From positions 124,001-188,000 of the IMG/VR virus record IMGVR_UViG_3300033183_000491: a stretch of 64,000 nt of DNA, one strand, 5' to 3'. Within the stretch, counting starts at the first letter, position 1, and every line of letters begins with the position of its first letter. Below, piece after piece: positions 41,058 through 60,466 of this stretch. The translations under genes and the position numbers were made by a program. The notes below the pieces were generated by a model that saw nothing but the letters and a program-made list of their open reading frames with translations, had not been told where the DNA came from and made no database searches.

Positions 41058-42995
41058 ATGGCAAACTACACACTCGGAAACGGTGACGGAATCCAGATTT
41101 GGAATCAAAGTAGTGCATCTACTAAGATTGCTCAAGGAAGTGATTCTGTTGAAATTAACGATATTGTAATTTCAGGTAATTCACCAAAACTTACAGTTCC
41201 TGTCGGGAGTCTATATTTAGGTGCAACGCAGATTACTGTTGAGGCGACAGAACTTAATACACTTGATGGTTTAACAGCTTCTACTACAGAACTTAATTAC
41301 TTAGATATTACTACTTTAGGTACAGCGCAAGCATCAAAAGCAATTACTGTTGATGGTTCATCACAAGTAGATGCTAGTGCAATCACATTTACAGATTTAG
41401 GTACAGTTACTACTGTTGATATTAATGGTGGTACTCTTGACGGAGTAACTATTGGAGGAGCTTCTGCAGGTGCAGGTACATTTACATCTTTAGATTGTAA
41501 TGACGGAGCATTTGCGATTGCAAATCTAGACATTGATGGCGGGACTGATATTGGTGCTGCTTTAGTCGATAGTGACTTATTTATTGTTGACGATGGAGCA
41601 GGTGGAACAAATAGAAAATCTGAATTATCACGTCTTAAAACTTATTTAGAGACATCATCACTTTCATTTTCTGGAGCAAATACATTTGAAAACGCTACAG
41701 GACAAACTTTCCAAGGTGATGAAGGAAACGCAGCTTCAATTTATCTTAAGGCAGATCAAGGTGATGATGCAGGTGACTCTTGGGAAATCTCTGTTGCTGA
41801 TGGTGGCGTATTAACATTCGGAAATGACTCAGCAGTTCAAGGAACTTATGCAGCTCACGTTACTCTTACACCAAATGCAGTCGCTGGTTCATCTTCAGCA
41901 TTATTTGCTGGAAATCTTACAGTTAATGGTGACCTTACTGTTAATGGTGATACAACTACACTTAGTACTTCTACTTTAACTGTCGAAGACATCAATATCG
42001 TAGTTGCAAATGGAGCAGCAGACGCAGCAGCAGCTGATGGTGCTGGTTTAACTATTGACGGTGCAGATGCTACTTTAACTTGGGTTAATGCTAGTTCTCA
42101 TCTCGCTTTTAATAAAGATGTTAACTTCATTACAGACGGTATCAAGATTAATGGAACAGCAGTTACTGCTACTGCAGCAGAACTTAATACATTAGATGGA
42201 ATCACAGCTAATGTTGGTGAACTTAATGTTCTTGACGGAATTACAGCTTCAACTTCAGAACTTAATCTTCTCGATGCAACAGCAGGATCAACATTAGCTT
42301 TAGCAGCTGGTGACGGTCTTATTATCAATGATGCATCTGATGGTAATGCAACAAAGAAAGTGCTTGTTAGCGATCTTACAAGTTTCTTTGCTACAAGTGG
42401 TTCTACAACAGCTGATAATATTACATCAGGATCAAGTGCAGTAGAAATTACTACGACTTCTGGTGACGTTGTAGTAGATGCCCCTACAGGACAAAGCGTT
42501 AATCTTCAAGTTAATGGCTCTGACGTTATTGAAGTTGCTGGTGGACGCGTTGACGTTTCACAACCTCTTATTCTTACAAATGCAGGTCTTAGCTTACAAC
42601 CAGCTGCAACACACCCAGCATTCTCTGTTGGACACGTTCTTGCTTTTGAAAGTAATGCTGCAAATGGTGGTTTAGAACTTGCAGATTGTGACGATACAGC
42701 AACTAGTTATCTAAATGCTCCTTTAGGTATTGCTTTAGAAACTTCTGCAGAAAACAGCACAAGTGCTATTATGGTTCATACTCTTCATGGTGCACGTGTT
42801 AATGTACAAATTTCTTCAAGTACAACAGCACAAGGACAATGGATTTACCTAAGCGACACACCCGGTGTTGCTACAACAACAGCACCGACAAGCGGTATGG
42901 TTTGGAGACTAGGTCTTTGTGTAGAACATAATGGAACTGCTGTAACTGATACTGATATTATTTGGATGCCACAATTCTTAGTAGATCTAGGATAA
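41058..42995 (+). CDS. Fibre protein with 13-aa ELNxLD repeats and a C-terminal beta-clip-like module
   Basis: G/A/T/S/D-rich; ELNTLDG repeats; DGGTDIG..LVDSDLFIVDDG module shared with 43743..45944; SD AAAGG. Confidence 0.75.
   Translation: MANYTLGNGDGIQIWNQSSASTKIAQGSDSVEINDIVISGNSPKLTVPVGSLYLGATQITVEATELNTLDGLTASTTELNYLDITTLGTAQASKAITVDGSSQVDASAITFTDLGTVTTVDINGGTLDGVTIGGASAGAGTFTSLDCNDGAFAIANLDIDGGTDIGAALVDSDLFIVDDGAGGTNRKSELSRLKTYLETSSLSFSGANTFENATGQTFQGDEGNAASIYLKADQGDDAGDSWEISVADGGVLTFGNDSAVQGTYAAHVTLTPNAVAGSSSALFAGNLTVNGDLTVNGDTTTLSTSTLTVEDINIVVANGAADAAAADGAGLTIDGADATLTWVNASSHLAFNKDVNFITDGIKINGTAVTATAAELNTLDGITANVGELNVLDGITASTSELNLLDATAGSTLALAAGDGLIINDASDGNATKKVLVSDLTSFFATSGSTTADNITSGSSAVEITTTSGDVVVDAPTGQSVNLQVNGSDVIEVAGGRVDVSQPLILTNAGLSLQPAATHPAFSVGHVLAFESNAANGGLELADCDDTATSYLNAPLGIALETSAENSTSAIMVHTLHGARVNVQISSSTTAQGQWIYLSDTPGVATTTAPTSGMVWRLGLCVEHNGTAVTDTDIIWMPQFLVDLG
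42180..42275 (+). repeat. 39-nt (13-aa) tandem repeat, three units; two further units at 41250-41300
   Basis: GAACTTAAT recurs at 42180, 42219 and 42258, and at 41250 and 41289 (period 39), encoding ELNxLD. Confidence 0.85.
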
Positions 42996-43011
42996 AATAG
43001 GTATAATTAAT

Positions 43012-43070
43012 ATCTCCAGTAATATATTTATTAACATCAATCCTAATTAAAATAATATATTACTGGAGAT
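43012..43070 (+). promoter_or_regulatory. Perfect 17-bp inverted repeat sequestering the SD of the 126-aa gene, with an internal ATATTTA (43024-43030)
   Basis: ATCTCCAGTAATATATT (43012-43028) is the exact reverse complement of AATATATTACTGGAGAT (43054-43070); GGAG at 43065-43068; ATG at 43075. Confidence 0.85.
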
Positions 43071-43074
43071 TTAA

Positions 43075-43455
43075 ATGTCAAGTAAAGAAAAAATTCTAAG
43101 AATAGGTTTAGGCGAAGCAATTTCAAGATTAATGAAACTTGAAAGTATGAGATCAAATAGACTTCACCCAATGCCAAGTCAAGCAATTGCTGAAAGAGAA
43201 ATGCTTTATTTAGCTCTAAATGAGATTAAAATTGATCTTGGTTTCGATTGTGATGATGATGGTCTTCCTGATTCTGTTGAAATTTTTGAACAAAGTGCTC
43301 GATCTTCTTGTTGCCGACTAGTTCAGTCTGAAGATAGTGGTCCGAAAAAGTCTAGAATTAATAGAGCAAAAGTTCAAAGAGGACAAGTTACAAAACAAGA
43401 AAAACCTAAAGAAGAAATCAAAAAGGCAAGAAAATCTCGCTCTAGAAAGAAATAA
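43075..43455 (+). CDS. Hypothetical protein with a DxDxDG-like loop and a K/R-rich C-terminal tail
   Basis: DCDDDGLPDS; tail KKARKSRSRKK; SD GGAG lies inside a 17-bp hairpin. Confidence 0.75.
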   Translation: MSSKEKILRIGLGEAISRLMKLESMRSNRLHPMPSQAIAEREMLYLALNEIKIDLGFDCDDDGLPDSVEIFEQSARSSCCRLVQSEDSGPKKSRINRAKVQRGQVTKQEKPKEEIKKARKSRSRKK

Positions 43456-43482
43456 ATATAATACTTGAAAGGAGTCACAGAT

Positions 43483-43746
43483 TTGTCTCTGTTTGAACTT
43501 TTATTTTGCTATGGATTAACATTTGGAATGATGAATAAAACATCATGGATTCAAAACAGAATTCAAATTTTAGATGATATGTTAGCTTGCTCATATTGCA
43601 CTGGGTTTCATGCAGGCTGGATTAGTCTTTTGCTTTTACATCCTACATTATTTAAAGACCCACAAACTATTTTGTTTTGGGCCTTTGTTTCTTCGTCATT
43701 TAGTTATATTATAGACACTTTTGTTGCCTATTTAGAAGATAATTAA
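43483..43746 (+). CDS. Small membrane protein, DUF1360-like (CxxC in a hydrophobic segment); start re-called to the TTG at 43483
   Basis: MLACSYCTGFHAGW resembles the DUF1360 LLxCxxCxxxW motif; 2-3 hydrophobic stretches; AAGGAG 8 nt before TTG 43483. Confidence 0.6.
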   Translation: MSLFELLFCYGLTFGMMNKTSWIQNRIQILDDMLACSYCTGFHAGWISLLLLHPTLFKDPQTILFWAFVSSSFSYIIDTFVAYLEDN

Positions 43747-45944
43747 ATGATAAACCAGTTTGATCCATCACAAATAGCAGTAATGCTTGAATATTGACTT
43801 GATAGGGCGAATGTTGCAGCACCATCAATAGTTTCTGAACCACTTGGATCAACAGTAATTGTATTTGCTGACAGGTTCTTTATTTGATATTTGTAACCGC
43901 TTCCTGCTGTTGCAGCTGCTGGTAAATTAACTGTAATATCAACTGAAGGTGTCAACAAGAATACTTCTTCGATTCCTGATGTTGTTGAAATAGTGTATGT
44001 TGAGCTTGGTGATGCTGAAGTAATTGTCGGAACTGATCCTCCACCACCTCCACCTGCAGCAGCTGCCCAATGTAAACCATTTGCAGTTGTATATGTTAAC
44101 ACATCATTGTCAGCAGGAGATTCTACAGAAACATCAAGTGCATTTAATTCTGTTGCAGATGAAGTAACAATATCTCCATCTAAGAAAAGTCCTGAATCGA
44201 CACCATTATGAGCAAGAATATTAACTTTCGATTTAAATGAGTCTCCAGAGATACCATCAATTTGAAGACCCGCGTTAAATCCTGGTATTGCATAAAGATG
44301 AAGACGACCAACATCTAAATTGCTTCCTGCAGCTGGGTCTAAAATTCTACAATTGATATTGGCATATATATTGTTTGCACCTGATGCGCCGGTAACATTT
44401 CCTTTGAAAGTAACACTACCAATAATATCATTTGCTGCAGGACTTGCCGAGTCAGCTTTAAAAGTAATATTTGCAGAAGATGAACCAGTATAATCACTAA
44501 GTAATGTAAAACTTGGATCATTGATACTAGCACCACTCATCTTTAAAATCAAGCCATCATCAGCGTCATGTTCAAGTCTAATTTCTTGATCATTACCAAA
44601 ATATAAAATTGAACCATCACCAAGGTATAGGTCTGACCAAGTATTAGATGCACTCCCTAAAGTTCTTCCGTTATTTGTTCCAGGGTACAAGTTTCCTGAA
44701 ATTTCTGTGTTAGTTCCTCCTAAAATATTTGTACCTGTTTGGCCAACACAAGTTGTAATAGGCGCGTAAAATTCTGCACGACCGTTTTGATTTCTATTAA
44801 AATTTAAAACGTCGATTGGTGAAGACCCTGTATTTGTGTGTTTAAGAGTAAATGCTCCTGAACCTGAATTGTTTATTATAAGGCTTCCAGAAGATGTTTC
44901 AATATTAACATTTGTACTTGCTGTTGTAATATCACTAGCAGCAACACTACCGCCTCCTGCGACTGTAAACGTACCTGTGTCTGTTGCAGAAGCATCTCCA
45001 CTTACAGATGAGAAAATATATTTCTTAAGTCTTGTAAGAGCAGACTTTCTGTTTGTTCCTGCTGCACCATCATCAACAATAAATAAATCACTGTCAACAA
45101 GATCAGCACCAATATCTGTACCACCATCTAAATCAAGTGATGTTAAAGAAACTTTATTTGCATCTGAGATTGTGTTTAACTTTGCATTTTCAATCGAACC
45201 TGCTAACATTGCATTAGTAATGCCGCTTGCAGAAACGTCGAGTGTATTTCCTGTTTTAGTTAATCCATCTCCTGCGATAATTTCTCCTGCTCCACTAAAT
45301 TGTGAGAAATCAAGAGAATCAGTCCCTACAACATCGCTTCCTGTGTTTGACGTACAAACAAATCCTTTATCTGCATTAACTGTTCCTTCTTCAACAAAGA
45401 CGAAAATACCAGCAGCTGCATCTGAAGCTGATAGGTCATCTGCTCTTGTCGGTGCGCCAGAAGCTGCAACAATATAGATACCATTTTCAGAAGCTGTAGA
45501 CTGATCTTTAACAAGTATTCTGTCACCAGTTGCCAGTGTAACTGAGGTGTCTAATGTGTCACCATTTTCTAGATCTGTAGCTAGTGTAACTGGACCAGTT
45601 GTAGCTGCTCTTACAGAAGATTTTACGTCTAATCCTTGTAATACAGAATCAACATAAGCTTTAGTTGCAGCATCACTTGAAGCTGAAGGCGCGCCAACAT
45701 TAACAATTCTTTGTGAACTTAAAGAAAGTTGTCCTGTAAGAGTAGCATTAGCAAGTGATGAAGACCCTGCAACAGTAAGTCCTTGTTCAATTGTCAAAGG
45801 TGCATCTTTTACTTTAAGAACATTACTCTCTTCAGTGATAGATGATGTTCCATAAACTGATTTTGTTTGGTGAACTTCGTTCCATAATTTTGAGCTGCTT
45901 CCTAGCGTGCCAACATTATTGACTTTAGGTACTAAATTAGCCAT
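43743..45944 (-). CDS. Mosaic fibre protein (733 aa)
   Basis: DAATKAYVD..., DRILVKDQ..ENGIY module, AGDGLTKTGN, DGGTDIG module, C-terminal LP..A...IKN...TIDG...DGSNWFII domain. Confidence 0.8.
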   Translation of the reverse strand: MANLVPKVNNVGTLGSSSKLWNEVHQTKSVYGTSSITEESNVLKVKDAPLTIEQGLTVAGSSSLANATLTGQLSLSSQRIVNVGAPSASSDAATKAYVDSVLQGLDVKSSVRAATTGPVTLATDLENGDTLDTSVTLATGDRILVKDQSTASENGIYIVAASGAPTRADDLSASDAAAGIFVFVEEGTVNADKGFVCTSNTGSDVVGTDSLDFSQFSGAGEIIAGDGLTKTGNTLDVSASGITNAMLAGSIENAKLNTISDANKVSLTSLDLDGGTDIGADLVDSDLFIVDDGAAGTNRKSALTRLKKYIFSSVSGDASATDTGTFTVAGGGSVAASDITTASTNVNIETSSGSLIINNSGSGAFTLKHTNTGSSPIDVLNFNRNQNGRAEFYAPITTCVGQTGTNILGGTNTEISGNLYPGTNNGRTLGSASNTWSDLYLGDGSILYFGNDQEIRLEHDADDGLILKMSGASINDPSFTLLSDYTGSSSANITFKADSASPAANDIIGSVTFKGNVTGASGANNIYANINCRILDPAAGSNLDVGRLHLYAIPGFNAGLQIDGISGDSFKSKVNILAHNGVDSGLFLDGDIVTSSATELNALDVSVESPADNDVLTYTTANGLHWAAAAGGGGGGSVPTITSASPSSTYTISTTSGIEEVFLLTPSVDITVNLPAAATAGSGYKYQIKNLSANTITVDPSGSETIDGAATFALSSQYSSITAICDGSNWFII

Positions 45945-46287: not shown

Positions 46288-49200
46288 TTAAATTATTTCC
46301 CAAGAGTCTACACCATCGCTAATCAAATCTAAACTTTGTCCTGGTGTTTGTGAATCTGTCATAACAAAAGAAGCTAATCCTTCAATATTATCGCCACTAT
46401 AAGGTATGACGGTTAGAAGGTTTGTTCCAGCTTTGAATTTGATCCTTAGTTGCTGGCCAGCTACTGTACTACTTACTTGGGGTAATGTAATGTTAATAGC
46501 TGAATTTGTTGTATTTACGCTATAGTGGTAATTTATTTGTGCATTAAATGATGTTGTCTTTGCTGAATATGTATAATGCATATTCGTTAATTGTGAACCA
46601 TCGACAGCAGGAAGTTTAGCATTAGCATCTAATTGTACAATATTATTAGCAGCAGTTCCTACGTCTAAGGCAGCAGCAGTTCCTAATGTTGGTAAGTCTG
46701 TCCAGCTTAAGACTCCGTTTCCATCTGTTCTAAGAACTTGATTTAAGTTTCCGCTAGATGTAGGAAGTGTCAGAGTATAATTTGCTGCAGCAGAGTGTGC
46801 TGGTCCTTGAATAGCTACCCAGTGTGTATTTTGTTCACACTTAAATCTAATTAGACCACTACCTCTTGTTGAGTTACCTTGAAGTGTAACATACCCTGCA
46901 CCGTTTGGATCAAGGTTGATGTGATATCCTAAACTTGTTGTTCTAATATCATATCCCCCAAGATCTAGATGTCCTCCTAGTACAGGCGAAGAATCTTCTG
47001 ATAGTGATTCAATGCCTCCTGTAGAATCAGACCATACAACATGTCCATTTGCATTATCCCAAGTTAAAACTTGTCCATCAGTAGGTGTATCATGACCAAT
47101 CTGAGTAACTTGACCATCTTGATTTGCTTTTAAGAACGTGTTGTGTGTAAAGTTACCCCAGTTTGACCCTAGATATGCACCAAAAACTCCTTTTGTTGAA
47201 TTAAATTCAATATCAAAGTCTGTATTAAGATCTGTATCAGCACCTTTAACTTTTTCAATATGGAAGAATGGATAAGGACCAGATAAGTCAATTCTTCTAG
47301 ATGAATCTGTAAATATAAACTTTCTACTTGCAGATTGAAGTACTAAATTAGAGTCTGAATTGTTTCCATAAGAATCAGCGATCAGTGCTTGTTGTGTACC
47401 TAAAACAAGAGACTTAGCTTGCGCAGTAACTGCTGATTCACCTGTAATCAAGATTTCAGATCCAGGATAGCCTGTTCCTCCAGCTCCTTCTGATGTTAAA
47501 GTCGTAAGAGTTCTTAAATTCATTCCGTCTTTAAATCTAATTTGTCGAGTATAATCTCCATTACTTAAAGATGAACTTATGACAAGAGAATCTGCAACAC
47601 CATTTAGATTAAAATCAATGTCTGCACTTGCAGAAGCGTTTGTTATTTCTATATTACCTGTACTACCAAGAGTCAATGTTCCGTTAGATGTTTCAAAAGC
47701 AATATTTCCACTGCCTTGAGTAATATCATCAGCAGAAGTTGATGTAGCTAATCCACTAACAAAATTAGCTTTGGTCATTTTCTTAAGATTGTTATTATCT
47801 TCAGAATCTGCTAATAAAATAATGTCATTGTCGTTAATTGCAAGTTTTTCAGTTTGACCTGTTAATGCTAAAGATTCTAAACTAAGTGTACCTGTACTTG
47901 TAATAGAAGCATCGCCAGAAACTTTTCCAAAGTTATAAGCAGCAATACTAGATGCTTCTACTTGATAGTTTATTCCTGAAGCTTCGTTATCTACTATAAA
48001 TAGATCTGAGTCTGTAATAGAAGCTAAATTATTTCCTCCATCAATATCAATAGAACTTAAAGCGACTTTGTTAGCAACTGTGAGAGTATTAAGCTTAGAG
48101 TTAGCAATACTCCCTGCAAGCATTGCACTTGTAATTCCGCCGCTTTTAACTTTAATGTTGTCATTAACATCTATTTCGATAGAAGCGTTATCCACATTAG
48201 CATCAATAACATTGCCATTCTTTGTTAAGCCAGCACCAGCGTCAACTTGGCCAGCTGAAGAGAATTGATAAACTGAAACGTCATCTGTTCCAACTACAAA
48301 TGTTGATGGATCTGAGACAACTTGAACCCATCCTGTACCTTCATTTGTCGTACCACTAGCAACAAATACGTATGCACCAGGAATTTCGTTAGATTCGTCA
48401 CAATATCCACATCGTGTCAAAATCCAGTCAGTAGCAGCGTCACCTATTTGTGATACATAATATCGACCATTTTGAAATGCTGATGTTTGGTCTTTTAATA
48501 AGACGCCGTCATATTGTGCCCAAGTAGTTACACCATCAATGTCTAATGTAGCACTTGCTCCTAGATTAAGAGTTGCACCTACACCATCATCTGCAATTCC
48601 ATTATCATATGTTCCTACTAAGTTTTGTGTTGTTGCAGCAAGAACTGAAGGTTTTGCAATGATTCCTTGTGCTACTTCGTCAACGTAAGCTTTATTAGCA
48701 GCATCACCATTTTCAGTTGGATTTGCAAGATTTGTAATCTTATTAGAGTTAAGATTTAAATCAACACTTTGTCCTGTTAAATCAACCGATGCTATTTCTG
48801 TATTGGAAGAGATCACCAGATTACCTGAGTTAACACTTATTTCAACGTTTGATGTATTGTTTGAATCTAACGTCCCCTTATCAACACGATCAATCTGGAG
48901 ATATTTTGGAGCTGTGACTGCATATGGATTGACTCTTGTATTAATCTTAAGACTGTTCTTTGATGCCATTAAGATTTCGCCGTCTGTTTGTGTACCATCA
49001 CCTGCTACTAAATGTAATCCGTGTGCAGATTGAGTCACAACATCCATTCCAATGTTACCACCAGTTATAAATCTTGTATTACGAGTTCCTGCGTGTGATG
49101 ACTGATTATACGCGTCATTTGTAAAAATACCTGCATAACTCTGCACATTACCTTCAGGGTCAGCCTCACCTACATCGTTTGTATGCGCTGCACCTTTAAC

Positions 49201-49746
49201 TCTTAATGCAGTTGCATTATCTTTTTGACCAATAATAACACCACTTGCTGTTAAGTCTTGACCTATTTGGACGTGTGACGAAGAGTTACCAATTAAAATA
49301 TCACTACTACTACCTATTTCAGATGAAATCCTTAGTTCTCCTGAAGTGTTGTTTATTAAGGAGTTGGTTCCATCGTGAGTTATAACTAAATCACTATCAG
49401 AACCCCATTTTAATTGAAAAGTATCTGGAATAATTGACGAAGAATTTTGGTCAAATGTTAATACTTTTGAATTCTCTGCTTGTCCTAATACAGATAAATC
49501 ATTATAATTCAACTCTAAAGAAGATGCAGTTATTCCTAATGACAAGATCGAATTATCAGGATTCTTGTTTATCCAAAATCCTTGTGTAGAGTCGTATATT
49601 AAAAAATGATTATCTTGAATATTATTTATATTGACATTGTTTAGATTATTAATATTACCGAGTGATAACAATTCTTCTACTTCGATTACTTCTGATGACA
49701 GTAGACTTGGATTGTCAATGTCACTATTAATAAAAATCGTATTCAT
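46288..49746 (-). CDS. Mosaic fibre protein (1152 aa)
   Basis: DAANKAYVD, VLLKDQ..QNGRY module, AGAGLTKNGN, SPVLGGHLD, GQVLTWD, C-terminal domain ending DGVDSWEII as in the 733-aa fibre. Confidence 0.8.
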   Translation of the reverse strand: MNTIFINSDIDNPSLLSSEVIEVEELLSLGNINNLNNVNINNIQDNHFLIYDSTQGFWINKNPDNSILSLGITASSLELNYNDLSVLGQAENSKVLTFDQNSSSIIPDTFQLKWGSDSDLVITHDGTNSLINNTSGELRISSEIGSSSDILIGNSSSHVQIGQDLTASGVIIGQKDNATALRVKGAAHTNDVGEADPEGNVQSYAGIFTNDAYNQSSHAGTRNTRFITGGNIGMDVVTQSAHGLHLVAGDGTQTDGEILMASKNSLKINTRVNPYAVTAPKYLQIDRVDKGTLDSNNTSNVEISVNSGNLVISSNTEIASVDLTGQSVDLNLNSNKITNLANPTENGDAANKAYVDEVAQGIIAKPSVLAATTQNLVGTYDNGIADDGVGATLNLGASATLDIDGVTTWAQYDGVLLKDQTSAFQNGRYYVSQIGDAATDWILTRCGYCDESNEIPGAYVFVASGTTNEGTGWVQVVSDPSTFVVGTDDVSVYQFSSAGQVDAGAGLTKNGNVIDANVDNASIEIDVNDNIKVKSGGITSAMLAGSIANSKLNTLTVANKVALSSIDIDGGNNLASITDSDLFIVDNEASGINYQVEASSIAAYNFGKVSGDASITSTGTLSLESLALTGQTEKLAINDNDIILLADSEDNNNLKKMTKANFVSGLATSTSADDITQGSGNIAFETSNGTLTLGSTGNIEITNASASADIDFNLNGVADSLVISSSLSNGDYTRQIRFKDGMNLRTLTTLTSEGAGGTGYPGSEILITGESAVTAQAKSLVLGTQQALIADSYGNNSDSNLVLQSASRKFIFTDSSRRIDLSGPYPFFHIEKVKGADTDLNTDFDIEFNSTKGVFGAYLGSNWGNFTHNTFLKANQDGQVTQIGHDTPTDGQVLTWDNANGHVVWSDSTGGIESLSEDSSPVLGGHLDLGGYDIRTTSLGYHINLDPNGAGYVTLQGNSTRGSGLIRFKCEQNTHWVAIQGPAHSAAANYTLTLPTSSGNLNQVLRTDGNGVLSWTDLPTLGTAAALDVGTAANNIVQLDANAKLPAVDGSQLTNMHYTYSAKTTSFNAQINYHYSVNTTNSAINITLPQVSSTVAGQQLRIKFKAGTNLLTVIPYSGDNIEGLASFVMTDSQTPGQSLDLISDGVDSWEII

Positions 49747-49790: not shown

Positions 49791-52700
49791 TTATCTTGAC
49801 GAACCAATAAATTGCCAAACGTAAGCATCAACTTCATCGATTATGTCACCCGGTGCAGTAGTTGTCCAGTTATCATTACCATGAACTTTAGTTATGTTTC
49901 CAAAACTATTTCTTGTCAATTCGAAAGTCAGTAATAAAGAACTAGAAGCTCGTAGGGAAAGAGACGTGTTTTTATAAAAATTAAGTCTATCATATGATGC
50001 ATAGGCACCGTGGCTCAACTTTCCAATAAACGTACATTGAGGAAATGAATTTTCTTTTGTTATAGCTCCCGGATTACCGTATTTATTGTCATCTGGATGC
50101 GGATAGACTCCAAAAGGAACCCAAATAGAGCCGTTAAAATTTGGCCCTCTGTCAACTTTTATAGTTATACGTGATCCAAATCCATAAGACGTTCTAACGC
50201 TTTCAGCAGATGGTAAATATATTTTTCTAGTTATATTATCTACATTATAAAAATTACCTAAAATAGCTAATCTATAAAAATCAAAACCGCTTTTAATTGA
50301 CATATAATATTCCTCGATAGTCCTTGAAGAAGCTTCAAAAGAAACATTTGCGATTGAATTAGTATCTTCTAAATCTAGTTGGACTGTGAGATTATCGTCA
50401 TTTATATTATAAGAGTTTAAATCACCTCCAGACAAGCTAGAGACGCTAAGAGATCCTACTGAAGCTGATATGTGTTGCTTTATAGCTTCTGCTGTTGCTA
50501 AATTTGAGTGTTTATCTGGTATATCATCTGATAAGTTATCTAAGACATTGACTTCACTAACATTTTGTGGGTTTGTTAAAGTTCCTACGTATCCTAGAAC
50601 TTTATTAGGATTAACTTTTTCAAGTTTTGATTTTGTGACTGCATTCTCATTTATCTTGGATGTTATAATTGCATTGTCACTAATATTTACAGATTGAATT
50701 GTTCCTTTTATAAGGGATGTACCTGATGAGTCGAACTTTAATACTTTATTAGAATCTTCAGAAGAACCTGTTAACGCTGATGGGAGTGTTACATCTTCGA
50801 CTTCATCAATATAATTTTCAATTAACCAACAATATTTGTTATTATATTCTTCTATAAAAGTAATTACTACTTTTTTAATTCCTTCTCCAGAAAATTTAAT
50901 TGTTTTTTGATTCGTAAAACCAAATTCCAAGTAATTACTATTATTAGTTGCATCTGATCTTTGCCATATATCATTTTGAGAAGAATTAATAATTAATTTT
51001 TGTAAGGCAATATCTGTAAAGTAAAAAGTCTTTTTGTCGCCGTTTATAAATCCATTTTCATAAGCTTCCAGTGCAGATGGTATATTCACAGACCTTGTAG
51101 TAGTCGCTCCAGTATCTCCTAAAGTTACTGAGTTTTTTTGTCGCCAAAGTGAAATATTGCTAAACTCTATAGGAGCTTGTGTTCCAGTTAGTTCATAATA
51201 AGAGTTATCATGAAAATCTTTTTTATCTAAAATACTAGCAAACCACCTTGTCCCATCGTATAAAAATTCTTTCGGGGAATGAAAATCTGTTCCATTATAA
51301 TAGATAACTAAATCATTTCCTAAATCTACTTTTACATTTAATTTTAAACTTGAAAATCTTCCTCTATTATTATGACTCTCTTCATAATAAGAATTCGGTG
51401 AATCGGGATAAGACATTGATATTTTTACAATGTCACCTTCTGATATGTCATTGAAACTTGTTAAGTTAAAAGTAAATAAAGATCCATCACTAACATTATC
51501 TTTAATATGATAGTGTTTGTTAGCTTTATATATATCACCTGGGTTAACAGTCGGAGTGATTAAACCAGCATTTGTAACAGGAATATATTCTAAATCATTA
51601 GGGATGTTTAAGCCTGACTTAAATTCAGAAATTGTAACTTTTTTATGTGTAGTAGATTCACTATCTTTTAAAACAATTAAGTCGTTATCTGTTACACTAT
51701 CATTTATTGAAAGCGGATTAAAATTCTCAATATCAAAACTATTTGCTGATTTTATATCAGAAAATGCAACTTTTTTAAGTAATGTAGATGAATCATCATA
51801 TACCAAGAAAGTATCGTCATCAGATAAAGGGCCATCACTGTTTGGATCGTTTGGATCTGAGTTGTAAAGAGTTTGTTCACTTATTGATTTTGAAGTTAAC
51901 GAAGAAGATAATTTTTGTACGCCATTGTCATCAACTACGCTAAATCCAACTTGACCTATCGAATCAGTAATATCTGCTCTTATATAATTTTTTAATACAG
52001 ATGCAGTGGATTTTGTTGTTAAACCATTTGGTGAATTAGCGCTAACATCTCTTACAATAAATAAATCATCATCAGCAATTGAATTTAAAACTGTATCGAT
52101 ATCATCCGGGTTAATTGCATTTTCGTTCACTGAAGAAGCTATAATATCTCCTGATATTTTACTAACAGGAATATCGGGAAGTCTAGCTACGTCAATTGTA
52201 CCAGTAAGAAGAGTAGAATCTACATTTTTTATTTTTAGATAATTATTATCAGGATCAACTTCGATTGATGTACCATCTGTTTTAACATCAAATACATTAC
52301 CTGTTTTTGATAAAGCAGCCCCAGCTTCGGTTTGGCCTGCCGCAGAGAATTTTGCAAATAAGATATCGTCATTTCCAACTGTATCAGCTGTTTCAGGCGA
52401 AGTACATATAAACCCAGATTGAGCATAAGTGTCACCTTCTTCGACAAATACAAACTTGGCTGAGACTTCATCGTTTAATTCAAAATCACTAGACCTTACA
52501 GCAGCACCTGATGCTTGAACTATATAAATACCATTATCGCGAGGGTCATTTTGATCTCTAACTAAAATTCTATCACCTGTTGAAACATTAACACCATCAA
52601 TCAAATCATTATTTTCAAGTTGGTCTGCAAGATTTATATTTGTTGTAGTTGCAAGCCTTACAGGTTGTAATACCTCTCTAAGACCTTGTACAACAAGATC

Positions 52701-58801: not shown

Positions 58802-60130
58802 TTAAAGTTTTGCTGCAACTATATTTGCAAGATCTGATCTATATCCCTTAGTGAAATTAATATGACCTGTTAAAGATTCTTCTTTTAATTTTTCAACTGT
58901 AAGAGTTAATCCATTCGATAATTTATTAATATAAGGTAAATCAACTTGTTCTATATCACCTAACAAAATTATTTTTGAATTTTTGCCTGTTCTAGTAATT
59001 ACAGTTTTTAATTCATGGACAGTTGCATTTTGAGCTTCGTCAACAATCATTACAGAGTCATTAAAACTTCTTCCTCTGATATGTGATAAAGGTGCTACGT
59101 CAATCTGACCTTTTTCCATCATCATTTCGAAATAAGAAAGATCTCCAAATTGATTTCTAAAGTTATCTACAATTGGTGATAACCAAGGAGACATCTTTTC
59201 ATTTAAGTCTCCGGGCAAGAAGCCAATATCTTTCCCTACTGTCTGAATAGGTCTTGTAAATATGATTCTTTTCTTTGAACCTTTTTCTATAAACTTTAAT
59301 GCAGTCATTAAAGCTAAGTATGTCTTACCACTACCAGGAACGCCTGTTAGAGAAACTAAAGGTATATTTTCATCTAATAAAAGACTTAAAGCAAATATTT
59401 GTTCTTTATTTTTAGGTTCAATACCAGAATTTTTATATAACTCTTTTTTTCCGTCCAAAACAATCAAACGATCATCTTTTCTTATTAGAAGACATGATTG
59501 ATTACTTCCGTTGTTAGATTTAAGAATTAAAAATTCATTTTCAGAAATGTCTATATTATAGTTTTCTTCAACAAGGTCTTCTTTTATCTTCAAATGATTA
59601 CCAGAATAGGCTCTGTTTATAACATCTGGGTCAACTAATAGTTCAACATACCCTTGGAATAAATTGTCTTTCTGCACAAATTCGTAATCTGCATAATAAT
59701 CATCTGCTTCTATTCCTACAGAATCACATTTTACTCTTAGATTAATGTCTTTAGTAATTAAAACAACTTTATTACTTAAATTTTTAAAATAGTTTGCATT
59801 AGAAATTATTTTATTATCATTTTGGTTTTGATCTAATCCTTGTAAACCTGACCAATCACATTCAGCATTTACTGTTATTGATATATCTTTATCTTCAACA
59901 TATATTCCTGAATGTAGGCTTCCTAATTTTCTTAAATCGTCTAGATATCTATTAAAAAATCTAGCATGTTCTCCTAAAATACCCTCTCTTGTTTTAAATT
60001 TATCTAGTTCTTCTAAAACAACTAAAGGTATTACTATATCATTTCCTTTCATATTAAACAAAGAAAATTTGTCATAAAGTAAAACGCTAGTGTCAACAAT
60101 AAAAGTTTTTCTAATATGTTTTTTACTCAT
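58802..60130 (-). CDS. phoH: PIN-PhoH protein (PhoH2/YlaK type)
   Basis: PIN motifs VDTSVLL, LEELD, DNKII, ITKDINLR; PhoH motifs GVPGSGKT, RGRSF, IVDEAQN, LLGDIEQVD. Confidence 0.93.
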   Translation of the reverse strand: MSKKHIRKTFIVDTSVLLYDKFSLFNMKGNDIVIPLVVLEELDKFKTREGILGEHARFFNRYLDDLRKLGSLHSGIYVEDKDISITVNAECDWSGLQGLDQNQNDNKIISNANYFKNLSNKVVLITKDINLRVKCDSVGIEADDYYADYEFVQKDNLFQGYVELLVDPDVINRAYSGNHLKIKEDLVEENYNIDISENEFLILKSNNGSNQSCLLIRKDDRLIVLDGKKELYKNSGIEPKNKEQIFALSLLLDENIPLVSLTGVPGSGKTYLALMTALKFIEKGSKKRIIFTRPIQTVGKDIGFLPGDLNEKMSPWLSPIVDNFRNQFGDLSYFEMMMEKGQIDVAPLSHIRGRSFNDSVMIVDEAQNATVHELKTVITRTGKNSKIILLGDIEQVDLPYINKLSNGLTLTVEKLKEESLTGHINFTKGYRSDLANIVAAKL

Positions 60131-60157
60131 TATCTAGTAAAATCTTTCTTTTAAATC

Positions 60158-60163
60158 TATAAT
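60158..60163 (+). promoter_or_regulatory. Sigma70-type -10 hexamer TATAAT for the stand-alone sigma-4 gene
   Basis: Exact TATAAT 39 nt before ATG 60203, in a divergent intergenic region. Confidence 0.35.
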
Positions 60164-60167
60164 AAAA

Positions 60168-60174
60168 TAAATAT
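60168..60174 (-). promoter_or_regulatory. Candidate late promoter ATATTTA upstream of the PIN-PhoH/lectin/fibre unit
   Basis: 37 nt upstream of ATG 60130. Confidence 0.45.
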
Positions 60175-60202
60175 CAAATTTATTAGAAAGGTTTATTAAA
60201 TA

Positions 60203-60466
60203 ATGAGTAATAATACAGATAGTTTAAATAATGTAACATGCTATAATGCACATAAACTAAAAAACAAAAGCTGTAAAAATAAAAAATGCAGATACTGGCA
60301 TGATCTAAACGATGATGACAATAACTGCATTTTAAACAAGGTAAATTCTGATAAGGATTTTACTTTGCAAGAAATAGGCGATTTATTTGGTATTACTAGA
60401 ATGAGAGTATGTCAAATCGAGAAAGGAATTCTCGATAAAATTAAAAAGAACTTAACTCTTGCCTAG
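60203..60466 (+). CDS. Stand-alone sigma-70 region 4 HTH protein with a Cys/His-rich N-terminus
   Basis: FTLQEIGDLFGITRMRVCQIEK matches sigma70 region 4.2 (TLEEVG..F.VTRERIRQIE); CxxxH..CxxxxCxxWH..C in the N-terminus. Confidence 0.85.
   Translation: MSNNTDSLNNVTCYNAHKLKNKSCKNKKCRYWHDLNDDDNNCILNKVNSDKDFTLQEIGDLFGITRMRVCQIEKGILDKIKKNLTLA

What the first reader, a model, noticed from the sequence alone, without database searches (positions are those of the whole stretch)
43002..43075. Perfect 17-bp hairpin hides an RBS and carries a late-promoter motif inside it: a T4-style translational timing switch
Seen: arms 43012-43028 and 43054-43070 are exact reverse complements around a 25-nt loop. The right arm contains the GGAG SD of ATG 43075. 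ATATTTA (43024-43030), the motif found before structural operons, sits at the end of the left arm, and TATAAT/ATAATTA (43002-43009) sits just before the hairpin. The upstream gene is on the same strand, so the repeat is not a by-product of two divergent RBSs. Known: T4 genes e, soc, 49 and I-TevI are silenced on long early transcripts by RBS-sequestering hairpins and released by a late promoter inside the hairpin. Inference: read-through or TATAAT-driven mRNAs fold and are not translated, while transcripts from the internal motif lack the left arm and are translated, so the two downstream genes are probably harmful if made too early.
Basis: partly seen in the sequence, partly recalled or inferred. 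Interest (0 to 1): 0.75.

Follow-up and report, generated by a model that had tools for sequence, protein, structure and literature searches.

The report
RBS-hiding hairpin with embedded promoter box
In a marine T4-like jumbo phage, a conserved RNA hairpin buries the ribosome-binding site of a small gene behind a tail-fibre gene, and a conserved promoter-like box sits where the gene's own transcripts would escape it: a trick known from phage T4, seen here in a new lineage.

Summary
Arms 43012-43028 and 43054-43070 are perfect complements around a 25-nt loop, CTCC pairs with the GGAG Shine-Dalgarno of ATG 43075, and no shuffle folds as well. The window belongs to a complete 239.5-kb, 29% GC phage with T4-type capsid and tail-tube genes. 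Relatives from metagenomes keep the gene order (fibre gene, 126-aa gene, small membrane-protein gene). About 16 distinct relatives keep a hairpin over the Shine-Dalgarno with different arm sequences: 84.6% of cells pair against 59.6% in shuffles, and 12 of 15 positions show compensatory changes. The same design recurs at other genes of this genome, and the one after the tail-tube gene is conserved with covariation. Other relatives carry an ordinary terminator at this position. Most likely the hairpin silences translation on read-through transcripts from the fibre gene, while transcripts started at the embedded box lack the 5' arm. No transcript 5' ends could be obtained. The box is not the phage's TATAAATA late motif. 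The upstream gene is itself structural, so insulation fits better than an early-to-late timing switch. This is a new member of a known kind.

The parts
41058..42995 (+). Upstream tail-fibre-like gene (645 aa), the likely source of read-through transcripts. Its stop codon is at 42993-42995, 16 nt before the 5' arm.
   Evidence: ORF list. Short DNA similarity to annotated tail-fibre genes of Roseobacter phages CRP-9 and CRP-13. The position before the 126-aa gene is conserved in relatives. No terminator-like site lies between it and 43075.
43002..43009 (+). First box TATAATTA (perfect TATAAT), just upstream of the hairpin. A start about 43014 would keep 15 of the 17 stem pairs.
   Evidence: Sequence. 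Top 0.02% of the genome by the phage's own -10 matrix. Not conserved in the nearest relative with an upstream region, L116. Opening energy for a start at 43014 is 15.4 kcal/mol.
43012..43028 (+). 5' arm of the hairpin. It contains the anti-SD CTCC at 43014-43017.
   Evidence: Covaries with the 3' arm among relatives.
43023..43030 (+). Second box TATATTTA (-10-like TATATT plus TA). It spans the last 6 nt of the 5' arm and the first 2 loop nt, and is the proposed embedded promoter element. Predicted start is about 43034-43036.
   Evidence: The only invariant block in the alignment of 13 relatives apart from A50 and the AT of the start codon. ATA[A/T]TTA is present 27-53 nt before the ATG in all 22 AT-rich relatives. 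The following 9 nt are identical between WIN and L116, while the rest of the loop matches at only 3 of 16 positions.
43029..43053 (+). 25-nt loop. The first 9 nt are conserved in the closest clade and the rest is free to vary.
43054..43070 (+). 3' arm of the hairpin. It contains the SD GGAG at 43065-43068.
43075..43455 (+). Regulated gene: a 126-aa protein of unknown function. It has a GLGEA motif, a DxDxDG-like DCDDDG motif, an SCCR motif and a very basic C-terminal tail.
   Evidence: ORF. The N-terminus is conserved in homologues, which fixes the start codon. 140 homologues have E <= 1e-10. No Pfam or PHROG hit. AF2 model is low-confidence and helical.
43483..43746 (+). Second downstream gene: a small membrane protein, DUF1360-like. 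The probable start is TTG 43483 (87 aa) with SD AAAGGAG at 43468-43474, not the TTG 43465 of the ORF list.
   Evidence: Sequence. Homologues are called at 87-92 aa. Atlas feature hits to DUF1360 phage clusters score 0.91-0.93. Not confirmed by a Pfam HMM.
43054..43081 (-). Antisense sigma-70-like promoter match, TTGACA-16-TATATT (11 of 12). It is formed by the codons ATG-TCA-A and the palindromic arm. Function doubtful.
   Evidence: The region as a whole has 13 promoter-like matches against 10.0 +/- 3.6 in shuffles.

Best explanation
The hairpin is a cis-acting translational insulator of the T4 type. On mRNA that reads through from the upstream fibre gene, the 5' arm (anti-SD CTCC) pairs with the Shine-Dalgarno region, so ribosomes cannot start at ATG 43075. 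This probably also applies to mRNA started at the TATAAT box at 43002-07. A promoter-like box, TATATTTA at 43023-30, lies at the end of the DNA that encodes the 5' arm. Transcripts started a few bases downstream of it, in the loop, lack the 5' arm and carry a free ribosome-binding site. The 126-aa gene and the membrane-protein gene behind it are therefore expressed only from their own promoter, uncoupled from the fibre message. Shown here: the structure, its selection, the constancy of the box, and the recurrence of the design. Inferred: that the box is an active promoter, where transcripts start, and that translation is repressed.
For: Structure and chance. Energetics: opening 43063-43077 costs 16.1 kcal/mol in read-through RNA, 15.4 from a start at 43014 and 5.4 from a start at 43035. 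Selection: twelve of the 22 relatives' upstream regions tested have an SD-covering helix that beats 200 of 200 shuffles, and their arms differ. Between WIN and L116 the arms differ only by one G-C to A-U double change, while 13 of the last 16 loop bases differ. Anchored on the SD, 84.6% of 240 cells pair, against 59.6 +/- 2.6% in partner shuffles (0 of 1000 reach it) and 41-50% with slid partners. Twelve of 15 positions show compensatory double changes. Box: ATA[A/T]TT is the only invariant block in the alignment apart from A50 and the AT of the start codon. ATA[A/T]TTA is found in all 22 AT-rich relatives. Its last bases are unpaired loop bases, and the mirror position beside the 3' arm is not conserved. 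ATAATTA is 6.8-fold enriched upstream of genes in this genome. Relatives L121 and L016 have TTGACT 16-17 nt upstream of the box, and L128 has TTAACA (read from the sequences). Recurrence: the same architecture (same-strand upstream gene, SD in the 3' arm, TATAAT-like hexamer in the 5' arm or loop) occurs at genome positions 96646, 63645, 18435 and 65402. The one after the tail-tube gene is conserved with different arms in 10 relatives. Relatives L018 and L025 and most GC-richer ones have an intrinsic terminator at the same place. Blocking read-through here and restarting therefore appears to be the conserved need. Precedent: T4 genes e, soc, 49 and I-TevI, where the promoter lies in the DNA encoding the 5' strand (PMC3014915, PMC2988022). 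The phage has T4-type gp23 and gp19.
Against: No 5' ends are available. Four metatranscriptomes gave only contigs of 90-97% relatives, covering the fibre gene with no coverage of 43008-43191. In this AT-rich DNA a suitably placed -10-like hexamer is found as often on the antisense control strand (14 of 16) as on the sense strand (16 of 16), so such hexamers alone prove nothing. The internal TATATT scores below the reporting threshold of 3 with a matrix trained on the phage's early promoters, whereas the upstream TATAAT scores high, and its transcripts would still fold. An unbiased count gives 7 G.U against 2 A.C inside the stems, p = 0.18, so sense-strand RNA pairing is favoured but not proven over a DNA palindrome. 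Two divergent gene pairs (genome 52551-52624 and 184120-184213) carry similar repeats that cannot form in either mRNA if the promoters lie in the loop. The relatives are phylogenetically related, so the counts are not independent events.
Confidence: 0.6

Rival explanations
1. A true T4-style temporal switch. Early or middle transcripts cross the region and are silent, a late promoter inside the hairpin releases translation late, and the purpose is to avoid premature synthesis of harmful products.
For: The architecture matches T4 e, soc, 49 and I-TevI. The phage is T4-like. A small membrane protein lies downstream, and in T4 the holin gene follows the fibre genes (own knowledge).
Against: The only same-strand upstream gene is a fibre-like structural gene carrying the same ATATTTA-type box plus a TATAAATC. 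The roughly 30-40 early-type promoters lie at 6-80 kb and 205-237 kb of the genome and none feeds this plus-strand island. The box is not the TATAAATA late motif. At the sibling hairpin, the tail-tube gene and the gene behind it have promoters of the same kind. There is no evidence of toxicity.
Confidence: 0.15
2. An RNA processing or stability element. The long stem is cut by host RNase III or acts as a 3' protective hairpin for the abundant fibre mRNA. The overlap with the SD is secondary, or serves to inactivate or activate the downstream cistron after cleavage.
For: Stems of 14-22 bp after high-copy structural genes, both fibre and tail tube. T7 uses RNase III sites between genes (own knowledge).
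Against: In every relative the 3' arm covers the SD or the start codon, although the 79-nt spacer would leave room for a compact hairpin elsewhere. The large 16-31-nt loops weaken a pure stability element but are needed to house a start site. No phage RNase III or RegB was found. The host is unknown.
Confidence: 0.14
3. A non-canonical transcription terminator or attenuator for the fibre gene.
For: Orthologous spacers in L018, L025, L005, L007 and most GC-rich relatives hold canonical terminators.
Against: The loop is 25 nt, the stem has only 4 G-C pairs, and only three U follow it. The terminator scan does not flag it. Relatives show no consistent U-run. The genome makes ordinary terminators elsewhere, for example at genome 238823-238855.
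Confidence: 0.05
4. A DNA-level palindrome: an operator for a dimeric protein, a cruciform, or a by-product of two mirror-image promoters, including the antisense TTGACA-16-TATATT.
For: The repeat is a perfect DNA palindrome. There is an antisense promoter match of 11 of 12. Divergent gene pairs elsewhere carry similar repeats. The G.U over A.C excess is not significant.
Against: The arms change freely between close relatives while pairing is kept, which a sequence-specific DNA site would not allow. Spacing between the arms of 16-31 nt is unlike operators. Several relatives rely on G.U pairs that are mismatches in DNA (L141, L124, L001). The antisense -35 is made of the Met-Ser codons.
Confidence: 0.05

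Closest known systems
Phage T4 inhibitory leader hairpins of genes e (lysozyme), soc, 49 and I-TevI, with relatives I-TevII/III, segB and Aeh1 mobE (Uzan and Miller 2010, PMC3014915; Edgell et al. 2010, PMC2988022)
   Same: The SD and/or AUG is sequestered in a stem on long transcripts. A promoter lies in the DNA that encodes the 5' strand, so its own transcripts lack that strand. The setting is a T4-like myovirus. Several genes in one genome use the device.
   Different: Here the embedded element is a TATA[A/T]TTA box, not TATAAATA. The stem is longer (17 bp perfect) with a 25-nt loop. The upstream transcript probably belongs to the same structural-gene class, so the effect would be insulation from read-through rather than an early-to-late switch. 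No transcript starts or translation data exist.
Intrinsic (Rho-independent) terminators between phage structural genes
   Same: The hairpin sits in the same orthologous spacer where other relatives have terminators. Both stop expression carried over from the upstream gene.
   Different: There is no U-run, the loop is long and the stem is AU-rich. It acts, if at all, on translation rather than on transcription.
T7-type RNase III processing hairpins
   Same: A long intercistronic stem follows a highly expressed gene.
   Different: No internal loops or bulges, no evidence of cleavage, and the SD is always inside the stem.

Membership tests
T4-type RBS-sequestering leader hairpin with embedded promoter | A stable stem in which the SD and/or the start codon is paired | tested here: met
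   17 perfect pairs, with GGAG 43065-68 paired to CTCC 43014-17. MFE -21.4, z -3.9. 16 kcal/mol is needed to open the start site.
T4-type RBS-sequestering leader hairpin with embedded promoter | The structure is maintained by selection (kept in relatives through compensatory changes) | tested here: met
   about 16 distinct relatives, 84.6% paired against 59.6% in shuffles, 12 of 15 positions with double changes.
T4-type RBS-sequestering leader hairpin with embedded promoter | A promoter in the DNA encoding the 5' strand, or in the loop, so that its transcripts lack the 5' arm | tested here: inconclusive
   The conserved box ATA[A/T]TTA lies at the arm-loop junction and some relatives have -35-like hexamers. 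The antisense control shows that -10-like hexamers are common. No 5' ends are available.
T4-type RBS-sequestering leader hairpin with embedded promoter | Longer transcripts from upstream traverse the hairpin | tested here: inconclusive
   A same-strand gene ends 79 nt upstream and no terminator-like site intervenes. Transcripts themselves were not observed across 43008-43191.
T4-type RBS-sequestering leader hairpin with embedded promoter | The embedded promoter is of the T4 late type, TATAAATA | tested here: not met
   The sequence is TATATTTA followed by TTAACA, and the best overlap, TATTAACA, is 6 of 8. Genuine TATAAATA boxes precede the capsid gene and other structural genes of this genome.
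T4-type RBS-sequestering leader hairpin with embedded promoter | The long transcripts belong to an earlier temporal class than the embedded promoter (timing switch) | not testable with these tools
   The genome layout argues against it. The upstream gene is structural and the early-type promoters are elsewhere. No time-course data exist.
Intrinsic terminator | G+C-rich stem, loop of 3-8 nt, run of U directly after the stem | tested here: not met
   The loop is 25 nt, the stem has 4 G-C pairs, and the tail is UUUAAAUG. It is not reported by the scan.
RNase III site | Cleavage of a roughly 20-bp duplex by RNase III | not testable with these tools
   The stem length (17-19 bp) is compatible. There is no phage RNase III and the host is unknown.
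Repeated mobile element (MITE-like) or known RNA family | Multiple copies in the genome, or a match to a curated model | tested here: not met
   The arm sequence is unique in the window. Rfam gives only chance hits below threshold.

The most novel reading that the evidence does not exclude
In this lineage of AT-rich marine T4-like phages, RBS-occluding hairpins with a promoter built into the 5' arm would be a general insulator between structural genes, interchangeable in evolution with intrinsic terminators at the same orthologous spacer. In relative L018 the same box sits inside a real terminator. The embedded ATA[A/T]TTA box would define a promoter class read by the phage's unusual split sigma factor, which has regions 1.2-3 and region 4 on separate genes.
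Probability: 0.2. Interest if true: 0.6.

Novelty: new member of a known kind. Interest (0 to 1): 0.4.

Why it matters
Gene regulation in uncultured marine jumbo phages is almost unknown. This locus gives a clean, comparatively validated example of post-transcriptional control: about 16 natural compensatory variants of one hairpin. It also shows that the T4 device of a promoter inside an RBS-sequestering stem reaches far beyond the T-even phages. The constant ATA[A/T]TTA box gives a concrete candidate promoter to test. The alternation between RBS hairpins and terminators at one orthologous spacer shows two interchangeable ways of uncoupling a low-copy gene from an abundant structural message. 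For annotation, long perfect inverted repeats at gene starts in such phages should be read as regulatory leaders, not as terminators or mobile elements.

Tried and rejected
- Metatranscriptome mapping: only assembled contigs of 90-97% relatives were available. They cover the fibre gene and stop before the spacer, so they give no 5' ends.
- RNAalifold on the MAFFT alignment found no pairs because the covarying arms are out of register. A covariance model from WIN + L116 retrieved the relatives but also their minus strands and chance hits, so alignment A4 was unfit for the pair-count tool. I used an SD-anchored count in Python instead.
- Test for a suitably placed -10-like hexamer: rejected as uninformative after the antisense control gave the same rate.
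- Bipartite early-promoter matrix: no match at the hairpin.
- G.U against A.C asymmetry: my first count (14 to 1) was biased by the helix finder. The unbiased count is 7 to 2, which is not significant.
- Searches in the genome for T4 gp55, RNase III, RegB and a multisubunit RNAP: no hits.
- Search for the tail-tube gene in the three relatives' records via handles found nothing. The viral-contig scan worked instead.
- Rfam: only sub-threshold chance hits.
- Function of the 126-aa protein: no Pfam or PHROG family. Atlas leads are weak, only TSP3/dockerin-like Ca-binding motifs. The AF2 model has pLDDT 67.5 and was not taken to fold search.
- Translational coupling by a terminating ribosome was considered and rejected as the conserved logic. 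The distance from the stop codon to the 5' arm varies from 0 to about 25 nt among relatives.

Full report
**1. What is in the sequence**

- 43012-43028 and 43054-43070 are exact reverse complements around a 25-nt loop. With two mismatches the repeat extends to 43006-43028 / 43054-43076.
- CTCC 43014-17 pairs with GGAG 43065-68, which lies 6 nt before ATG 43075.
- TATAAT is at 43002-07 and ATATTTA at 43024-30.
- The upstream ORF 41058-42995 is on the same strand, and two ORFs follow: 43075-43455 and 43465/43483-43746.

As RNA the region folds at -21.4 kcal/mol, with z = -3.9 and none of 200 shuffles as stable.

**2. The genome**

The window is bases 124001-188000 of a complete 239,550-bp virus record with direct terminal repeats and 29.3% G+C.
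- It encodes a T4-type major capsid protein (PF07068, E 4e-66) and a gp19-like tail tube.
- It has no multisubunit RNA polymerase.
- It has a sigma factor with regions 1.2, 2 and 3, and a separate 87-aa protein with only region 4.
- T4 gp55, RNase III and RegB were not found.

K-mer enrichment upstream of genes reveals several promoter-like classes.
- A bipartite GTGTA[A/T]-N17-TATAATA class of about 30-40 sites lies at 6-80 kb and 205-237 kb. This looks early.
- A TATATAATA class has no -35 element.
- ATAATTA(GA) is enriched 6.8-fold.
- T4-like TATAAATA boxes sit 21-31 nt before the capsid gene and other structural genes.

**3. Is the hairpin unusual in this genome?**

Yes. Only five perfect inverted repeats of 17 bp or more exist in the genome. 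Repeats with 15 or more matched pairs number 11, against 0-1 in simulated genomes. When the 299 gene starts are ranked by pairing probability of SD plus AUG, eight stand apart above 0.8, where the 95th percentile is 0.76. This gene ranks 6th.

Four of those eight share the same design: a same-strand upstream gene, the SD in the 3' arm, and a TATAAT-like hexamer in the 5' arm or loop. They are this gene and the genes starting at genome 96646, 63645 and 18435. A fifth gene, at 65402, has the start site enclosed by an 18-bp stem but was not among the 25 highest-ranked starts. The other four outliers are two divergent gene pairs whose two start regions are mirror images (52551-52624 and 184120-184213).

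**4. Relatives**

Scans with the 126-aa protein and its alignment gave about 100 loci. Look-ups of ten homologues that are 67-99% identical gave 30 more. The order fibre gene, 126-aa gene, small membrane-protein gene is kept.

Every close, AT-rich relative has a helix whose 3' arm covers the SD or the start codon, and the arms differ. Examples:
- L116 differs from the window by a single G-C to A-U double change.
- L124, L128, L016, L132, L136 and L141 have largely different arms of 14-22 pairs.
- L141 pairs GGAGGA with UUCUUC through two G.U pairs.

Twelve of the 22 upstream regions tested beat all 200 shuffles. Anchored on the SD, 84.6% of 16 x 15 cells form standard pairs. Partner shuffles give 59.6 +/- 2.6% (0 of 1000 reach the observed value) and slid partners give 41-50%. 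Twelve of 15 positions show compensatory double changes.

Between the window and L116, the 34 arm bases differ only by the compensated pair and the first 9 loop bases are identical. Thirteen of the remaining 16 loop bases differ. This is the signature of selection on the stem and on the start of the loop.

**5. The constant element**

In the alignment of 13 relatives the only invariant block, apart from A50 and the AT of the start codon, is A-T-A-[T/A]-T-T at 43024-29, part of TATA[A/T]TTA. The box ATA[A/T]TTA is present 27-53 nt before the ATG in all 22 AT-rich relatives. This includes those that have a terminator instead of an SD hairpin.

Its last bases are unpaired loop bases, and the mirror position next to the 3' arm is not conserved. 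The constraint is therefore on a sense-strand sequence and not merely on pairing.

Two relatives have TTGACT 16-17 nt upstream of the box, and one has TTAACA (sequences). The same box type precedes the fibre gene in the window and in L001 and L002.

The window has a second, upstream copy, TATAATTA at 43002-09, which the nearest relative with an upstream region (L116) lacks.

**6. Consequences for folding**

The cost of opening 43063-43077 depends on where the transcript starts.

| Transcript | Opening cost (kcal/mol) |
|---|---|
| Read-through RNA | 16.1 |
| Start at 43014 (expected from the upstream TATAAT) | 15.4 |
| Start at 43035 (expected from the internal box) | 5.4 |

**7. A second, independent case**

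The hairpin after the tail-tube gene (genome 96647-96709) is kept in ten relatives, L160-L170. Their arms are different, 12-28 pairs long, and cover the SD and often the AUG. More distant relatives with a different downstream gene lack it.

**8. What other relatives have at this spot**

L018, L025 and L026 (AT-rich) and most GC-richer relatives have a classical terminator just before the SD. In L018 the box lies at the 5'-arm/loop junction of that terminator. The conserved need therefore seems to be to stop what comes from the fibre gene and restart. The window's clade does this at the level of translation.

**9. Interpretation**

The best reading is a T4-type inhibitory leader. The stem silences the 126-aa gene on read-through, and probably also on transcripts started from 43002-07. 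Transcripts from the embedded box escape. T4 genes e, soc, 49 and I-TevI work this way, with the promoter in the DNA that encodes the 5' strand (PMC3014915, PMC2988022).

- The box is not the phage's TATAAATA late motif.
- The only plausible read-through comes from a structural gene with the same kind of box. No early-type promoter feeds this plus-strand island. Insulation or stoichiometry control is therefore more likely than an early-to-late switch.
- Nothing shows the products to be harmful.

**10. Limits**

- There are no 5' ends. The metatranscriptome contigs of relatives stop before the spacer.
- In this AT-rich DNA a suitably placed -10-like hexamer is as common on the antisense control strand. 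The promoter claim therefore rests on positional conservation, not on motif matching.
- The early-promoter matrix does not score the internal box above its reporting threshold.
- The G.U over A.C excess, 7 to 2, is not significant.
- The divergent mirror-image start regions elsewhere remain unexplained by an RNA model.
- The relatives are not independent samples.

**11. Rivals**

- A terminator is unlikely: long loop, no U-run, not flagged.
- A sequence-specific DNA operator is unlikely because the arms vary.
- A mobile repeat or a known RNA family is excluded.
- An RNase III or stability role cannot be excluded. It does not explain why the SD is always inside the stem.

**12. Verdict**

This is a real, selected, RBS-occluding hairpin with a conserved promoter-like box in its 5' arm, in a marine T4-like jumbo phage. 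It is a new member of a known kind. It is interesting mainly for the unusually clear natural covariation and for the alternation with terminators.

Noticed in passing
window 60203-60466 (+) and genome G000:C1:25962-26711 (-): The phage seems to carry a split sigma factor. A 249-aa protein has Sigma70 regions 1.2, 2 and 3 but no region 4. A separate 87-aa protein matches only Sigma70 region 4. This could relate to promoter classes that lack a -35 element.
   Followed up: partly
window 60120-60213 (genome 184120-184213), and genome 52551-52624: Two divergent gene pairs have mirror-image start regions: a 14-bp repeat with one mismatch for the PhoH/PIN gene and the region-4 gene, and a 17-bp perfect repeat for two unknown genes. 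If the promoters lie in the loop, neither mRNA carries both arms, so RBS sequestration does not explain them.
   Followed up: partly
genome G000:C1 6-80 kb (- strand) and 205-237 kb (+ strand): A sharp bipartite promoter class, GTGTA[A/T]-N17-TATAATA, is often followed by AACCATAAGG. It has about 30-40 sites before small genes and its -35 element is unlike TTGACA.
   Followed up: partly
window 43054-43081 (- strand): A near-consensus sigma-70 promoter match, TTGACA-16-TATATT, points antisense into the fibre gene. It is built from the Met-Ser codons and the palindromic arm, and similar matches occur in L116 and L141 (sequences).
   Followed up: partly
window 41058-42995 (+), 43743-45944 (-), 46288-49746 (-): Three fibre-like genes share a roughly 30-residue module (DIDGG..., SDLFIVDD...GTN). 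Parts of the 733-aa gene are 73-79% identical at DNA level to tail-fibre or structural genes of Pelagibacter podophages, which hints at a SAR11-type host.
   Followed up: no
window 43465-43485: The ORF list starts the membrane-protein gene at TTG 43465, but that codon is part of the SD AAAGGAG. The likely start is TTG 43483, giving 87 aa as in homologues. The gene's stop overlaps the stop of the convergent 733-aa gene by 4 nt.
   Followed up: yes
loci L044, L053, L057, L068, L073 and others (upstream of the 126-aa homologue): In GC-richer relatives a TATAAT-like hexamer often sits directly before the 5' arm of the terminator hairpin, so a start about 7 nt downstream would fall inside that arm. 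This may be the same 'own transcripts escape the hairpin' logic applied to terminators.
   Followed up: no
genome G000:C1:81264-81321, 80660-80704, 89937-89967: Several long perfect inverted repeats (20, 14 and 14 bp) lie inside large coding genes, away from any gene start. Their role is unknown.
   Followed up: no
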